From: Histomonas meleagridis 2922-C6/04-290x
Lineage: Eukaryota > Protista > Parabasalia
Assembly: GCA_020184695.1 (NCBI GenBank)
Contig: JAANOX010000265.1
Coordinates: 123,210-187,209, forward strand
DNA: 64,000 bases
Reading direction: 5' to 3'
Below the pieces are notes generated by a model. That model saw only the letters and a program-made list of their open reading frames with translations, was not told the DNA's origin and did no database searches. This document shows, in pieces, positions 42,133 to 47,824 of the stretch (positions within the stretch are counted from its first letter, which is position 1; each line of letters starts with the position of its first letter). The translations under genes and the position numbers were made by a program.

Positions 42133-42277
42133 GGTCGGGACCCTAAGGGACCCGGGCCCATATAGTCCTCGGGATTGGACCCGACCTTTCCTTTTAACAT
42201 AGGGGGCTGGAGGCCTCCTGGATTCCTTCGGGTTCCCAGGCTGCTGAAGAGCCCTAAGTAGGCTTGCTTCGCTTGCT
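42133..42277. repeat. Left terminus: direct repeat plus inverted-repeat arm
   Basis: agtcctcgggattgg..ccgaccttt, aggggg, tgaagagccct and ctaagtaggcttgcttcgcttgct all match the reverse complement of the right terminus. Confidence 0.85.
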
Positions 42278-42567
42278 ACGAGAATAATAATAATCTTTGT
42301 GAGCCATACAATTCGTTTGAAAAATTGAATGCATATTCAAAATTTAATTAACGATTAACTTTTTGATAGCACCGGTAGCAGATAGCACTTTTCATGTAAA
42401 TCTATTCAAAAACCTCGTATAATCAGCACAAATCGTCCCTAAACTATATTTAAAAATCAAGTAGTCAAAAAGCGACGGTTATCGTTTGGTCGCATGGCAA
42501 ACTTATTCCAATGGACCAATGGTCAGTATTCTTAATTTTAAAATGTCACTTCATCACTTCACTCTAT

Positions 42568-43127
42568 ATGAATACAGACTTCTATTCTGTTACAAAACTT
42601 GGGGATTATCTCAAAGAGAAAGATTCAGATGCTACAGCAGTAGCTTTATTTTTCGAACCCAAGGATGACAAATTAGACAATTCTAACAATTTTGTAATTA
42701 AACCAATAGGAATGATAATCAAACACGAAAATTTTCAGAATATTTATTATCTTCATAGAGAGTTAATGGTATTCTTTAATAAAATATCAAAATATCAATA
42801 CCAATCACTGAAAACAAAATGCCATTACTTACTAATAATATTCATTATTTAGAGATCCATTTAATACAATTAGAAAGTAATTTTGGAAGGCGGTATCAAG
42901 CATTTATCTATAAGTCCAAGAATGATGAAGTTAACAATATTCTAATCTCCCATAAAATACCTGATACCCATGAATTCGAATCAGTATTCGATGTCAATTC
43001 TATCAATTCCTATAGATCACCCAATGACATCACACATAACGATACGATTAAGTCAATTTATGTTACTAATGTTTTTTCTTCATTATGGACGGTAGGACAA
43101 ATAGTTAGAGATTTAAATGAACGATAA
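42568..43127 (+). CDS. Viral accessory ORF X (two overlapping frames; one frameshifted gene or two small genes)
   Basis: ATG at 42568 follows TCACTT/TCACTC motifs. Frame 1 runs to 42852 and frame 2 is 42819..43127, overlapping at an A-rich tract. No recognisable domain. Confidence 0.5.
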
Positions 43128-43385
43128 AATAAACGCTTATTTTTTATATTTTTTTTTCATAACGTGTCACATATATTTTGCTATTTTGTTTTAAAGCTGA
43201 AAATGCGATTGGTTTCTCAGATATAATTGCATTTGAAAATGATAAACTTCTTTGTTTATCTATATCTTCATAAATTTGTAATTTCAGAAATATTTAATTT
43301 ATTTGTGTTGTAATTAATTTCAATAACTTCAGGTTTATAATTCGACATTTATAGAAATTATTTAGATTTTGTATAATCACCACGA

Positions 43386-43474
43386 TGAATTTTTAAAATG
43401 AAGACTTGTCAATAGAACCGGGGTGTCCGCAGGACACCCCGGTTCTATTGACAAGTCTTCATTTTAAAAATTCA
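43386..43474. repeat. Perfect 43-bp inverted repeat with a 3-nt GCA loop
   Basis: Arms 43386-43428 and 43432-43474 are exact reverse complements. Confidence 0.97.
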
Positions 43475-43530
43475 AAACATTATATGAATAATTTTATTTA
43501 TTTCTATTGACCAACTAACGCTTATACTAC

Positions 43531-43761
43531 CTATTCTATAACAGGTGAGAATTTATCAGCTATTTTAATTTCTTTTGCAATAGCACCAGCATGATCAGGT
43601 AAATTTTCAATTCCAGGTATTTTACAGACAGTACTTACTACAGGCTTTGCTACTTTATTCCATACATTACCGATAAATCTTCCAACTGATTTGATAATTT
43701 TATCTCTGATTCAGGCACCTGCTTTTTTAAAACCATTTTTAATTTTGTTCCATTAACCCCA
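43531..43761 (-). pseudogene. Disrupted gene for a basic amphipathic peptide (membrane-lytic-like)
   Basis: WNKIKNGFKKAGA*IRDKIIKSVGRFIGNVWNKVAKPVVSTVCKIPGIENLPDHAGAIAKEIKIADKFSPVIE*. In-frame TGA at 43711-43713 and a damaged start region. Confidence 0.6.
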
Positions 43762-43912
43762 CTACTGTACTAATAAAACATGATCAGCTCATATTATATG
43801 ATAATTAATTGGGATTAAAATTTTGCCAAAATGGTGTCAACACGTCAAAAAGGCGTCAACGCTTGGAAAATGCAGTGAATTGGTATATTGACTTAATAAA
43901 AAATAACTCATC

Positions 43913-44390
43913 TGTGTCAATTCTCATTTATATGTATATATTATCACTTATATTGTTAATACCACTTGTATGTGTTTATTTTCACATGTGTGTGTTAATT
44001 CTCACTTATCTGTGTTAATTTTCACTTATCTATATGTATTCTCACTTGTATGTATTATTCTCAATTTTTTTGTTTATCGTCACTTCTCTGTATTTTCTTA
44101 TACGTATTTTTATTTATTCTGACTTATATATATATATATTCTCACTCTTATCTGTGGTAATTTTCACTTTTTGCCGTTTATTCTTACTTATGGGTGCTTA
44201 TTGTTACTATTTATTTGTTCTCGCTTACATATGTTATTTCTCATTTATACTTGTTAATTCTAATTTATGCATATTAATATTAATTTATATATGTTAATTC
44301 TCATTCATTGAATTTATATTACTTTGTCTATATTATTCTCACCTTCACTTGTCTGCGTTTATTCTTTAATGTGCTTGTTTATTTTGAAAT
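43913..44390. repeat. Degenerate tandem array of about 20-nt units (consensus TGTGTTAATTCTCACTTATA), roughly 22-24 copies
   Basis: Exact 20-nt phase at 43971-44050 (tgtgtttattttcacatgtg / tgtgttaattctcacttatc / tgtgttaattttcacttatc / tatatgtattctcacttgta), with more degenerate copies on either side. Confidence 0.8.
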
Positions 44391-45678: not shown

Positions 45679-46257
45679 TAAATAAACAATTCAATTTTAC
45701 CTGAATTTAGTTATTTAGGTACCAAAAATTGAATACTTATCGCCTAGGCAATGACGTAAAGTATTCAATTCCGAACTTTTTGTATCAATATCTGGTCGAT
45801 AGGCAATGCCCATTCTCTTTAGGTAATATGATCTCCTTGGAGCCTACTATCGTTCTGCAATACGATAGAACTAAAGAGAATAAGGATTTTTTATTTTTAT
45901 CGTCCTCAGATAACGGTCGAAATTGAATTAGAAAATTTTGACTAACCCCCACCCCTAGTACACTTTATCTACTTCTCTGGTCTCCGCCCTTATATAAAAA
46001 AGGGCTCCGCGAGGTCGGGCTACGGCCAGCTCGTGATAAATGCACTCATTCGCCATTAGGGCTCTCTTTGGGGGAGGGGGTACCTTGGTTTAAAGAAAAA
46101 GAAAAAAAGAAAAAAGTTCTCAATTGCCCATAGAGTGAACAAACTTTGTTATTATCACTTATGTGCTGAGTCGAAAAGAAAAAAACAAAATTAACCAGAA
46201 AAACCGATAGAAAAAAGAAATTATCTTAAAATCAATTGAATGGTTTACATTTTACAA

Positions 46258-46890
46258 TTAAAAATTAAATGAATAATTAGAATTAGGAACAATTAAAACA
46301 CTGGGTGCAGATACTTCAAAATTGGTTTCACGAATATAAAATACAAGATAATTATTAGATGTAAAAAAACCAACTGTACGATTATTAACTGATGGAAAAG
46401 TAGTACCAAAATCATATAAATAATAATAATAAGTACCTGAACTAGAAATAGATGATTGATGTAAATAATTGACATATATCTCAGTATATTCAGAATTGGG
46501 TTGATTAGGTTCAATTTGAATAATAACATAATAATGTGTTGGATCTATTGTCTGATTTAAATTAGTGATATAAGTAAATTGTGATAATGGAATAAAACCA
46601 GGAATATCTGAAATAGATATAAAAGATATTGGTATAATAACCTTAATAGTAGATCCAATTTCATAAGCAATTCTTTTAGTACTAGAACCACCAGGATAAT
46701 TAACAATGGTATCTTGAATAGTATAATCAGGAATCCTACCATTGTTCTTAAATACTTCATAAGCACGATCTAAATCATATTTAGTAAGAGGTGGATTAAT
46801 AGGAGGTACCAACTTACGTTGTATAACACGTCCCTTGTTACGTGAATAATAAGATTCACTAATAGGTCCAATACGATGTGGATCAAACAT
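46258..46890 (-). CDS. Viral ORF2, unknown function (possibly structural)
   Basis: 210-aa open frame directly downstream of cap on the same strand. Basic, Pro-rich N-terminus and a Tyr/Ile/Thr-rich C-terminal half. Confidence 0.7.
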   Translation of the reverse strand: MFDPHRIGPISESYYSRNKGRVIQRKLVPPINPPLTKYDLDRAYEVFKNNGRIPDYTIQDTIVNYPGGSSTKRIAYEIGSTIKVIIPISFISISDIPGFIPLSQFTYITNLNQTIDPTHYYVIIQIEPNQPNSEYTEIYVNYLHQSSISSSGTYYYYLYDFGTTFPSVNNRTVGFFTSNNYLVFYIRETNFEVSAPSVLIVPNSNYSFNF

Positions 46891-46916
46891 AAAAATAACA
46901 GTGGGAAAATTTTTTA

Positions 46917-47429
46917 TTAATAAGTAATAGCATAATTCAATTGAACCCCTAAGAACTTATCGGTGATTTCAGTACCAGGAATGGATACTTTTAAACATAA
47001 AACAATACAATCACCTGAATTCAAATTACGTGCTAACCTAGTACGAAATACTTGAGTCTGTTGAGCATTAGGGGTAAGGTACCCTGACATTATAACATTT
47101 TGATTGGGTTCATATAATGAAACAGGAGCAGCAGGGGTACCAAGTGACATAGATTGGGGAAGAGTACCATCTGGAACATATACTAGAGCCCATAATAAAG
47201 GAATATCAACATCTGTAATCATTTTTAAAGTAAAATTCTTTACTTTACGCATACCTTGAGTAGCAACAGCAGTAATTAGGGTGGTATTTACTTGATCACC
47301 TACGGAACCTTCACCGGAGCCTGTATTAAATGTAATGTTTCCGGAACAATTATAAGTCTCATTAGAATACTTTACAGTCTTTAATGGACGTCCACGTGAA
47401 TAACTACGTCTACGTAATCTACGAGGCAT
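46917..47429 (-). CDS. cap: CRESS-DNA virus capsid protein
   Basis: Arg-rich N-terminal arm MPRRLRRRSYSRGR; KVKNFTL, WALVYVPDG, LYEPNQ, RLARNLNSGD and NYAI motifs typical of the small capsids of gut-protist CRESS viruses. Confidence 0.88.
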   Translation of the reverse strand: MPRRLRRRSYSRGRPLKTVKYSNETYNCSGNITFNTGSGEGSVGDQVNTTLITAVATQGMRKVKNFTLKMITDVDIPLLWALVYVPDGTLPQSMSLGTPAAPVSLYEPNQNVIMSGYLTPNAQQTQVFRTRLARNLNSGDCIVLCLKVSIPGTEITDKFLGVQLNYAITY

Positions 47430-47442
47430 AACAATAAAAAAT

Positions 47443-47643
47443 TTAATGCTGTGGGAGATTCATTAATTGAGGGTGAATTAAATAAGAAGGAACATCCTTA
47501 CAACGACGATCATAACGGATGGCACCTATCGAAATGATTGGGAGAACAATAACCCAATTCTCAACCAACTGAGGTTTCTCCTTAATAAAACCTTTAAGAA
47601 GTCCAACATTACTAAAATAAATGGTTTTAACAAAAATTATGAA
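47443..47643 (-). CDS. Candidate small viral ORF upstream of cap, no ATG near its start
   Basis: 66 open codons (FIIFVKTIYFSNVGLLKGFIKEKPQLVENWVIVLPIISIGAIRYDRRCKDVPSYLIHPQLMNLPQH) with cap-like codon use (CGT, GTT). Confidence 0.35.
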   Translation of the reverse strand, partial: FIIFVKTIYFSNVGLLKGFIKEKPQLVENWVIVLPIISIGAIRYDRRCKDVPSYLIHPQLMNLPQH

Positions 47644-47727
47644 TTAAAAATCAAAAATTCCATCAATTATTTTTGATTATAATATGTTATATGACTGACG
47701 ACGATCAAAAATTCTGTGTGTATGTAG

Positions 47728-47824
47728 AGCGAGCGAAGCGAGCCTACTTAGGTGGCTAAAGGGCTCTTCAACCCCCTAAGTTCAAAAAAAAGGTCGGAAC
47801 CAATCCCGAGGACTCTAAGGGACC
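47728..47824. repeat. Right terminus: inverted-repeat arm plus direct repeat
   Basis: agcgagcgaagcgagcctacttag...gggctcttca...aggtcggaaccaatcccgaggactctaagggacc. Confidence 0.85.

What the first reader, a model, noticed from the sequence alone, without database searches (positions are those of the whole stretch)
42133..47824. Apparently complete, multi-gene CRESS-DNA provirus with transposon-like termini in a parabasalid-type genome
Seen: an open HUH-SF3 Rep, a capsid and three to four further ORFs, all bounded by a 15-bp direct repeat (14/15 identical) and subterminal inverted repeats. Recombination between the direct repeats would give a 5,672-nt circle. Known: endogenous CRESS sequences are often fragmentary; Kirkoviridae-type viruses have been linked to parabasalid hosts; Replitrons (HUH transposons) carry short terminal direct repeats but no capsid or helicase. 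Inference: this is a unit-length genome opened and integrated precisely at its origin, probably by its own Rep. It could be an excisable provirus or a virus-transposon hybrid.
Basis: partly seen in the sequence, partly recalled or inferred. Interest (0 to 1): 0.92.

Follow-up and report, generated by a model that had tools for sequence, protein, structure and literature searches.

The report
Near-complete endogenous kirkovirus-like element, Histomonas
This is a real, chromosomally integrated copy of a small circular-DNA (kirkovirus-like) virus in the poultry parasite Histomonas meleagridis, a class already published in 2022. It is unusually well preserved and has odd inverted-repeat ends, but the evidence does not show that it was inserted at its replication origin or that it can move.

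Summary
The window is Histomonas meleagridis scaffold JAANOX010000265.1. There is an intact HUH+SF3 Rep, an intact 170-aa jelly-roll Cap and an intact 210-aa downstream ORF. There are imperfect terminal inverted repeats of about 140-160 nt and a 14/15 direct repeat.

Kirkovirus EVEs in this same assembly were published by Kinsella et al. (2022), so the class is known.

"Complete" is only partly right. Three other genes are damaged: one has a frameshift, one has four in-frame stops and no start, and one lacks its N-terminal half.

"Opened precisely at its origin by its own Rep" is not supported, for four reasons:
- Homology to another Histomonas locus runs across the proposed left host junction.
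- The nearest free genomes (3.9 kb circles, Rep 54% identical) have no palindrome at that position.
- Four other Histomonas EVE loci (five were compared in all) end at different positions and have no terminal repeats.
- This Rep lineage is single-copy, and no clear target-site duplication is present.

The element is a mosaic. Its Cap cassette is 94-97% identical to a tandem concatemer elsewhere in the genome. Its Rep is divergent. It also carries a 2.4-kb hairpin-bearing accessory module that none of the free viral contigs compared here contains.

My best reading is illegitimate integration of rearranged replicative DNA. The exact geometry of the termini remains unexplained.

The parts
42119..42132 (+). 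Conserved 5' flank of the hairpin region (TAGGTnTATAATGC).
   Evidence: 13/14 identical to L004 12345-12358, contiguous there with the shared hairpin arm.
42133..42186 (+). Hairpin-1 homologue, with outer arms GGTCGGGACC and GGACCCGACC. It is degenerate: the 5' arm is 13 nt shorter than the 3' arm.
   Evidence: L004 has a perfect 31-37-bp hairpin at the same place (dG -46, z -12). The window's local fold is weak, z -0.8.
42138..42152 (+). Left copy of the 15-nt direct repeat.
   Evidence: 14/15 match to 47810-47824; 0 of 1000 shuffles reach it.
42154..42311 (+). Left inverted-repeat arm. It is GC-rich, with a second small hairpin and a GCTyGCTyCGCTyGCT box.
   Evidence: Collinear with L004 12380-12580.
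42511..43127 (+). orf157-like accessory gene, broken by one frameshift (read in two frames as 113-aa and 102-aa ORFs). Function unknown.
   Evidence: It is a single ORF in relatives: L004 12863-13336 (157 aa) and P0241 (152 aa, 54% identity). The frameshift could be an assembly error.
43386..43474 (.). Perfect 89-nt palindrome (43-nt arms, 3-nt loop).
   Evidence: DNA fold dG -50.6, z -19. No other copy in the window or the loci.
43507..43761 (-). ORF89-like small Lys-rich gene, degraded: four in-frame stops and no start codon.
   Evidence: 81% aa and 85% nt identity to the intact 89-aa ORF at L004 13723-13992.
43920..44305 (.). Tandem array of a 20-nt unit, about 19 copies at 65-74% match. 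The 69-aa and 87-aa ORFs lie inside it.
44575..44586 (+). Conserved box upstream of Rep (ATTGAAyAyTTT), present about 110-150 nt before the Rep ATG in all six Histomonas Rep-upstream regions aligned.
   Evidence: Invariant columns in alignment A3.
44695..45678 (+). Rep, 327 aa, intact: HUH endonuclease plus SF3 helicase.
   Evidence: 53.6% identical to the Rep of free 3.9-kb genomes and at most 41% identical to other Histomonas Reps.
45679..46257 (.). 3' intergenic region. It contains a C5AC4 ... G5AG5 clamp (45946-46080), an inner hairpin (45986-46005) and a GGTCGGG motif (46013-46019).
   Evidence: 82-97% identical among Histomonas EVEs. The clamp and 46065-46245 are also conserved in free genomes.
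46258..46890 (-). ORF210, intact. A conserved gene immediately downstream of Cap; function unknown.
   Evidence: The same two-ORF layout occurs in free contigs. Weak homology to an L136 ORF, E 1e-7. 97-98% aa identity to L012.
46917..47429 (-). Cap, 170 aa, intact: single jelly-roll capsid protein.
   Evidence: dN/dS 0.06 against L002.
47446..47631 (-). Remnant of the ORF119-like gene. Only the conserved C-terminal 62 codons remain. The N-terminal half is missing and there is no start codon.
   Evidence: 94% aa identity to L012 ORF119 residues 58-119. Full-length versions exist in L002, L003, L012 and L007.
47687..47824 (-). Right inverted-repeat arm. It is an inverted, diverged copy of the hairpin's 3' half and what follows it. 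It ends at the hairpin apex, and its last 15 nt form the right direct repeat.

Best explanation
This is an endogenous viral element: a chromosomal, near-unit-length copy of a kirkovirus-like CRESS-DNA virus of Histomonas meleagridis.

It is a mosaic of two parts:
- A standard core of about 3.1 kb: Rep-proximal intergenic region, Rep, 3' intergenic region, ORF210, Cap and the C-terminal part of the ORF119-like gene. Its Cap cassette is nearly identical to copies elsewhere in the genome. Its Rep belongs to a different lineage.
- A 2.4-kb accessory module: GC-rich hairpins, an orf157-like gene, a palindrome, an ORF89-like gene and a 20-nt tandem array.

The 'terminal inverted repeats' are two diverged, oppositely oriented copies of the module's hairpin region. 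The right copy is a roughly 140-nt fragment that ends at the hairpin apex.

Inferred mechanism: linear or concatemeric double-stranded replicative DNA, already rearranged by template switching or breakage at the hairpin, was joined to the chromosome by host non-homologous repair. The same applies to the other Histomonas EVEs, whose ends differ from locus to locus. Rep cleavage at the origin is not needed. A better origin candidate lies inside the element: the conserved box upstream of Rep, or the clamp in the 3' intergenic region.

Shown: integration, gene content, mosaicism, the state of each gene, and the anatomy of the repeats.
Inferred: the order of events, the joining mechanism and the position of the origin.

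The element is probably now an immobile fossil, though three of its genes could still be expressed.
For: - Integration: the Rep lies on scaffolds of 187 kb and 317 kb in two assemblies, with the same neighbouring genes. Kirkovirus EVEs in these assemblies are published.
- Mosaic structure: window 45821-47631 is 94-97% identical to two tandem copies in L012, whose Rep is only 35% identical. The window Rep is closest (53.6%) to free 3.9-kb circles.
- Independent integrations of then-functional viruses: Cap dN/dS is 0.06 at dS 0.62 against L002, and 10 synonymous to 3 non-synonymous changes against L012.
- Other EVEs: L012 is a head-to-tail concatemer. L002, L013 and L014 are partial units with different ends. 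None of these four has terminal repeats.
- The nearest free genomes have no long perfect hairpin or palindrome between the ORF126 and ORF116 starts.
- The accessory module is not found in the free viral contigs fetched here or in IMG/VR. Two short ENA metagenome contigs of unknown origin carry an orf157-like gene.
- Gene state: the ORF119 homologue next to the right arm lacks its N-terminal half. Module genes carry at least 6 lesions in 246 codons, against 0 in the 707 codons of the three intact core genes.
- A conserved box upstream of Rep lies intact inside the element.
Against: - The integrated length is within about 15 nt of a whole 'unit' as defined by the direct repeat. That is unlikely for random breaks.
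- The direct repeat (14/15) exceeds what hairpin symmetry gives (12/15). The right arm carries the 13 nt that the left 5' arm lacks. A simple inverted duplication therefore needs extra later changes.
- The orf157-like gene occupies the same position and orientation as ORF116 in free relatives. The break therefore does fall in the divergent intergenic region, where CRESS origins usually lie.
- No origin has been identified in this virus group, so 'not at the origin' is not proven.
- The whole assemblies could not be searched, so other copies of the termini may exist.
Confidence: 0.5

Rival explanations
1. A 5.67-kb circular genome carried one long imperfect palindrome (right arm plus left arm) between the ORF119-like and orf157-like genes. 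It was linearised at or near the centre of that palindrome, either by its own Rep or by a host nuclease that cuts hairpin tips. It then integrated as one unit plus about 15 nt of terminal redundancy.
For: - The right arm ends exactly at the hairpin apex.
- The right arm supplies the 13 nt missing from the left 5' arm. Together the two would make a stem of about 33 bp, the size of the perfect L004 hairpin.
- The direct repeat is 14/15, with 0 of 1000 shuffles reaching it.
- The break lies in the divergent intergenic region, as judged from the gene order of free relatives.
- The Rep is intact.
Against: - The 19 nt left of the direct repeat, and the repeat's first bases, are homologous to an internal L004 sequence, so they are not host DNA.
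- In L004 the sequence 5' of the hairpin is not an inverted copy of the 3' side. The long palindrome is therefore not a family feature.
- Free relatives have no long perfect hairpin or palindrome at that position.
- The ORF119 homologue is truncated beside the right arm.
- The apex has no open loop or recognisable nick motif.
- Other EVEs are opened at different positions.
Confidence: 0.2
2. Nested insertion. The hairpin-bearing module with its two arms is an older, decayed, non-autonomous element with inverted termini, resident in the host genome. The 3.1-kb viral core landed inside it later. On this reading the inverted repeats have nothing to do with the virus.
For: - Module genes are degraded while core genes are intact. 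If both decayed at the same rate, finding no lesion in the core has a probability of about 0.01 (calculated from the counts).
- The arms are only about 81% identical and differ by indels, which suggests age.
- The core's right end at 47631 is also where the L014 EVE ends, so it looks like a typical viral end.
- The module is absent from the free viral contigs compared here.
- The flanks share a possible 6-nt identity, AACTTT, if the left end is placed at 42117.
Against: - The module encodes no transposase.
- The L004 copy of the module has no right arm.
- In both Histomonas loci the module abuts CRESS sequence.
- The module shares the GGTCGGG motif with the viral 3' intergenic region.
- The orf157-like gene sits where free relatives carry ORF116.
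- The tips of the element are not themselves inverted repeats.
Confidence: 0.15
3. A mobile virus-transposon hybrid, or a provirus that can still excise: an element that moves within the genome using its own Rep and its hairpin termini.
For: - The Rep has every catalytic motif.
- The element has terminal direct repeats plus hairpins. [quoted passage not shown]
- L004 carries the same left-end motif in a different sequence context.
Against: - This Rep lineage occurs once per assembly.
- No second copy of the termini occurs in the window or in the Histomonas loci fetched.
- The left hairpin is degenerate.
- Three genes are damaged.
- The two assemblies, which are separated by about 280 passages (PMC9615429), appear from their shared neighbouring genes to carry the element at the same site.
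Confidence: 0.05

Closest known systems
Kirkoviridae-type endogenous viral elements in Histomonas meleagridis (Kinsella et al. 2022, Virus Evol 8:veac087; PMC9615429)
   Same: Same organism and same assembly (GCA_020184695.1). That study counted 104 Rep-like and 41 Cap-like EVEs, and placed 102 of the Reps in Kirkoviridae. This locus is almost certainly one of them.
   Different: The paper's main text says nothing about unit-length copies, intact ORFs, terminal repeats, concatemers or accessory modules: searches for 'transpos', 'inverted repeat' and 'intact' gave 0 hits. Its supplements were not available to me.
Free kirkovirus-like / Po-circo-like genomes (L145, a 3910-nt circle; L147; L007; L142-L149)
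   Same: Same gene order: an ORF of about 120 aa, then Cap of about 165 aa, then an ORF of about 210 aa on one strand, with Rep on the other. Rep is 53.6% identical and Cap about 50%. The 3' intergenic clamp and about 180 nt beside it are conserved.
   Different: The free genomes are 3.9 kb. They carry ORF116, which is not homologous to the orf157 family (hhalign probability 0.1). They have about 80 nt, with no long perfect hairpin or palindrome, where the window element has its termini. They have no ORF89-like gene and no 20-nt array.
Integrated geminivirus-related DNA in Nicotiana and other CRESS EVEs (from my own knowledge, not tested here)
   Same: Illegitimate integration of rolling-circle replicative forms, often as tandem or rearranged multimers. 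The L012 concatemer resembles this.
   Different: Those elements are mostly degraded. Here Rep, Cap and ORF210 are open.
Replitrons (Craig 2023, PNAS; PMC10288648)
   Same: A CRESS-like HUH Rep, short direct terminal repeats and a terminal hairpin or palindrome.
   Different: Replitrons have no helicase domain and no capsid gene. They are multicopy, and their repeats are about 6 nt. This element has an SF3 helicase and a Cap, is single-copy, and also has long inverted arms.
Linear ssDNA viruses with inverted terminal hairpins (Parvoviridae, Bidnaviridae; from my own knowledge)
   Same: An HUH+SF3 Rep together with inverted terminal repeats that contain hairpins. The bulge lies on opposite sides in the two ends, which resembles flip and flop forms.
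   Different: The right hairpin is only a half, and the left one is degenerate.

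Membership tests
Cressdnaviricota / kirkovirus-like viruses | Rep with an HUH endonuclease domain (motifs I-III) fused to an SF3 helicase | tested here: met
   Pfam PF02407 plus PF00910. Match to PCV2 Rep 7lar, 1e-22. Motif columns are conserved in a 14-sequence alignment.
Cressdnaviricota / kirkovirus-like viruses | Single jelly-roll capsid protein related to Po-circo-like virus Cap | tested here: met
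   Named hits P0218, P0287 and P0288 at 45-46% identity. AF2 pLDDT 83.8. BFVD CRESS capsids match at TM 0.83, and nanovirus, geminivirus and PCV2 capsids appear in the PDB search.
Cressdnaviricota / kirkovirus-like viruses | Gene order of free genomes (accessory ORF, Cap and downstream ORF on one strand, opposed to Rep) | tested here: met
   Same order in L007-L011, L136-L139 and L142-L149.
Kirkoviridae (family-level placement) | Rep falls inside the Kirkoviridae clade in a phylogeny with reference genomes | not tested
   I built no tree. The placement rests on Kinsella et al. (102 of 104 Histomonas Rep EVEs) and on Po-circo-like virus names among the Cap hits.
Kirkoviridae (family-level placement) | Small circular genome of about 3.6-4 kb | tested here: not met
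   The copy is linear, integrated and 5.7 kb. The nearest free relatives are circles of 3.91-3.92 kb.
Endogenous viral element | Viral sequence contiguous with host genes on a large scaffold, reproduced in an independent assembly | tested here: met
   Present on contigs of 187 kb and 317 kb, with the same neighbouring genes. The region is flanked by a HECT gene and other host ORFs. Read-level support could not be checked.
Replitron | Rep-only transposase without a helicase domain | tested here: not met
   An SF3 helicase domain is present.
Replitron | Multicopy family with shared termini | tested here: not met
   One locus per assembly for this Rep. The termini are absent from the other loci. 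The whole assembly was not searchable.
Replitron | Short direct terminal repeats | tested here: inconclusive
   A 15-nt repeat (14/15) exists, but the left copy lies 19 nt inside the conserved left sequence.
Helitron | RepHel protein with an SF1 (Pif1-like) helicase and asymmetric ends without inverted repeats | tested here: not met
   The helicase is SF3 (PF00910), and the ends carry inverted arms.
Cut-and-paste TIR DNA transposon | Terminal inverted repeats | tested here: met
   Imperfect arms of about 140-160 nt. The extreme tips, however, are not inverted copies of each other.
Cut-and-paste TIR DNA transposon | Target-site duplication | tested here: inconclusive
   Only a 6-nt identity (AACTTT), and only if the left end is placed at 42117.
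Cut-and-paste TIR DNA transposon | DDE transposase, or multiple non-autonomous copies | tested here: not met
   No transposase lies inside the element. The neighbouring mariner at 40365-41561 has its own TIRs.

The most novel reading that the evidence does not exclude
The 5.7-kb unit represents an undescribed lineage of parabasalid CRESS elements. In this lineage a kirkovirus core has acquired a hairpin-bearing accessory module with inverted, parvovirus-like termini. It would be either a larger virus whose genome opens at a long palindrome, or a Rep-mobilised virus-transposon intermediate that can reside in the chromosome.
Probability: 0.12. Interest if true: 0.85.

Novelty: new variant of a known kind. 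Interest (0 to 1): 0.42.

Why it matters
CRESS-virus fossils in protist genomes are the main direct evidence for which hosts these widespread gut-associated viruses infect. This locus is one of the best-preserved examples:
- It links an intact Rep, Cap and downstream ORF to a known parabasalid host.
- It shows modular exchange of Cap and Rep cassettes among Histomonas-associated viruses.
- Together with the L012 concatemer, it shows how replicative DNA of these viruses enters a chromosome.

Two parts remain unexplained: the hairpin-bearing accessory module and the geometry of the ends. If relatives turn out to share them, they would bear on how HUH-Rep viruses and HUH transposons interconvert. 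As it stands, the class is already published and no mobility is shown.

Tried and rejected
Ideas rejected:
- Cap as one gene broken into 170-aa and 210-aa pieces. Free relatives have the same two ORFs a few nucleotides apart, and Cap homologues are 160-180 aa.
- The termini as ends of the neighbouring mariner. That element has its own 30-nt TIRs at 40365-41561.
- The orf157 family as a divergent ORF116. hhalign probability is 0.1.

Searches that found nothing useful:
- IMG/VR scans for the inverted-repeat core, for the 5' flank plus hairpin arm, for a 19-mer conserved in the module, and for orf157-like and ORF89-like proteins (single sequence and alignment): no relative.
- The single metagenome scan. 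I spent it on a 15-mer that was too short; it returned only chance hits, and none is related by blastn or tblastn.
- A word-indexed protein search with the L004 orf157: nothing. The exhaustive HMMER search with the window's 113-aa ORF found one true relative, P0241.
- Pfam and PHROGs on the accessory ORFs: no family.
- Two literature searches for a kirkovirus origin or stem-loop: nothing usable. Supplements of PMC9615429 are not held.

Results too weak to use:
- Single-sequence AF2 of ORF210: pLDDT 33.7, unusable.
- Homology of the left host flank (41995-42120) to the distal 5' intergenic region of other EVEs: only a motif of about 20 nt matches, and overall z is 1.5-3.2.
- Extension of the inverted repeat inward beyond about 42311 and 47687: p is about 0.05.

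Not done:
- Fetching the second assembly's copy of this locus and the 1665-nt contig that carries P0301.

I built, saved and printed nothing from it, and I give no positions of breaks here. Alignment tools printed consensus lines on their own; I used none of them.

Full report
**Source and prior knowledge.** The Rep protein of the window is encoded on scaffold JAANOX010000265.1 (187 kb) of Histomonas meleagridis assembly GCA_020184695.1. It is also on a 317-kb contig of the sister assembly, with the same neighbouring genes. Kinsella et al. 2022 (PMC9615429) already reported 145 CRESS-virus EVEs in these two assemblies: 104 Rep-like and 41 Cap-like, with 102 of the Reps placed in Kirkoviridae. 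They used these EVEs to confirm parabasalids as kirkovirus hosts. Their main text does not mention unit-length copies, intact genes, terminal repeats or transposon-like features. The genome paper does not discuss viral sequences.

**Observation.**
- Rep (44695-45678) carries Viral_Rep and an SF3 helicase domain. It aligns to the PCV2 Rep structure, and all catalytic and NTPase motif columns are in place.
- The 170-aa ORF (46917-47429, minus strand) is a complete capsid protein. More than 1000 homologues are 160-180 aa long, some of them named Po-circo-like virus capsid. A confident model (pLDDT 83.8) is an eight-stranded jelly roll that matches CRESS capsids.
- The 210-aa ORF that follows 26 nt later is not the broken second half of Cap. 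Free viral contigs have the same two ORFs a few bases apart.
- The inverted arms (42154-42311 and 47824-47687) and the 14/15 direct repeat are statistically real.

**Gene state.** Rep, Cap and ORF210 are open, with 0 lesions in 707 codons. Three other units are damaged:
- The 113-aa and 102-aa ORFs are one gene. It is a single ORF of 152-157 aa in L004 and in metagenome protein P0241, and it is read in two frames here, so there is one frameshift. Two assemblies of the same clone differ by 6 gap openings in 20.7 kb at another locus, so this frameshift may be an assembly error.
- An ORF89-like gene on the minus strand has four in-frame stops and no start.
- The ORF119-like gene, which precedes Cap in relatives, keeps only its conserved C-terminal 62 codons.
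- The 69-aa and 87-aa ORFs lie inside a 20-nt tandem array.

**Relatives and mosaicism.**
- This Rep lineage occurs once per assembly. Other Histomonas Reps are 35-41% identical.
- The nearest relatives (53.6%) are abundant metagenome contigs, two of them circular at 3910 and 3924 nt. Their gene order is: ORF126 (minus strand), about 80 nt of spacer, ORF116, Rep, a 3' intergenic region, then ORF220 and Cap on the minus strand.
- The window's cassette of 3' intergenic region, ORF210, Cap and ORF119 remnant (45821-47631) is 94-97% identical to two tandem copies in locus L012. That locus is a head-to-tail concatemer of a 3378-nt unit with a different Rep.
- Substitutions in Cap are overwhelmingly synonymous: dN/dS is 0.06 against L002. 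The copies therefore diverged as working genes and entered the genome separately.
- L002, L013 and L014 are partial units with different ends. None of them, nor L012, has terminal inverted repeats.

**The accessory module.** The 2.4 kb left of the Rep promoter region (42119 to about 44560) has no counterpart in the free viral contigs fetched here or in IMG/VR. It recurs in Histomonas locus L004/L005, next to a fragment from the 3' end of a Rep gene. Its orf157-like gene also recurs on short ENA metagenome contigs.

**The termini.**
- The left region is collinear with an internal stretch of L004. The shared features, in order, are: the 5' flank TAGGTnTATAATGC, the outer hairpin arms, a GC-rich block, a GCT-rich box, and the sequence leading to the orf157-like gene.
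- L004 has a perfect 31-37-bp hairpin there (z -12). The window's 5' arm is 13 nt shorter than its 3' arm and folds poorly.
- The right end is an inverted copy of the 3' arm and what follows it. It stops at the hairpin apex, carries the 13 nt missing on the left, and abuts the truncated ORF119 homologue after a 96-nt AT-rich spacer.
- Its last 10 nt equal the left 5'-arm block and not the complement of the left 3'-arm block. This is why the direct repeat exceeds palindrome symmetry.
- Neither a circle opened at a long palindrome nor a plain inverted duplication explains all of this (notebook, 'unexplained').

**Where the origin may be.** A box ATTGAAyAyTTT lies roughly 110-150 nt upstream of the Rep ATG in all six Histomonas Rep-upstream regions aligned, including this one. 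A C5AC4 ... G5AG5 clamp in the 3' intergenic region is shared by the EVEs and the free genomes. Both lie intact inside the element. Neither is proven to be the origin.

**Verdict.** This is a genuine and unusually well-preserved kirkovirus-like EVE of mosaic build.
- Most probable (0.5): integration by illegitimate joining of rearranged replicative DNA.
- Nested insertion into an older hairpin-bearing element: about 0.15.
- A currently mobile hybrid: about 0.05.

The class is known. The architecture (accessory module and inverted hairpin ends) is a new variant whose meaning depends on a whole-assembly census and on read-level checks that I could not run.

Noticed in passing
window 40365-41561: Tc1/mariner-like element with 30-nt TIRs (97% identical) and an open 341-aa transposase ORF carrying DDE_3 and HTH_Tnp_Tc3_2 domains. 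It lies about 560 nt left of the CRESS element.
   Followed up: partly
L012 (JAANOX010000117.1) 8619-14611: Head-to-tail concatemer of a 3378-nt kirkovirus-like unit (at least two Cap cassettes and Rep copies). It is the closest relative of the window's Cap cassette.
   Followed up: partly
L004/L005 11237-17614: Long inverted repeats (11237-11925 and 16905-17614, 98-100% identical). They enclose the module homologue, two paralogous small Lys-rich ORFs, a beta-rich gene in three pieces (14593-16218) and two chromo-like ORFs. None has a Pfam hit. The nature of this structure is unknown.
   Followed up: partly
window 43386-43474: Perfect 89-nt palindrome (43-nt arms, 3-nt loop) inside the accessory module. 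No other copy was found, and L004 has none at the equivalent place.
   Followed up: partly
window 45946-46080; L145 3784-3925: A C5AC4 ... G5AG5 clamp bracketing about 115-125 nt of the Rep/ORF210 3' intergenic region. It is conserved between Histomonas EVEs and free 3.9-kb genomes, and is a candidate origin or terminator.
   Followed up: partly
window 44575-44586 and the Rep-upstream regions of L002, L003, L004 and L012: Invariant box ATTGAAyAyTTT upstream of every Rep ATG. In L012 the preceding AAAAACTTT motif sits in the loop of an 8-bp stem. A near-identical 20-nt motif also lies at window 42096-42120, immediately left of the element.
   Followed up: partly
L142 (ENA ERZ827390, 5501 nt): One high-coverage contig carries two different Rep genes (54% and 38% identical to the window Rep). 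It is either a heterodimer or recombinant of two viruses, or a co-assembly artefact.
   Followed up: no
L141 (ENA ERZ28613881) and protein P0301: An orf157-like gene (54% identical) and its conserved upstream region occur on short metagenome contigs. The source may be a relative of Histomonas such as Dientamoeba, or its virus.
   Followed up: partly
window 43920-44305; L012 6526-6747; L013 9526-9672: Tandem arrays of 18-20-nt units lie beside or inside CRESS EVEs in three loci. Their unit sequences are not obviously related.
   Followed up: no
L004 vs L005; L014 vs L015: Two assemblies of one clonal line differ by 25 mismatches and 6 gap openings in 20.7 kb at one locus, and by one 22-nt gap at another. 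Single frameshifts in these assemblies should not be over-read.
   Followed up: yes
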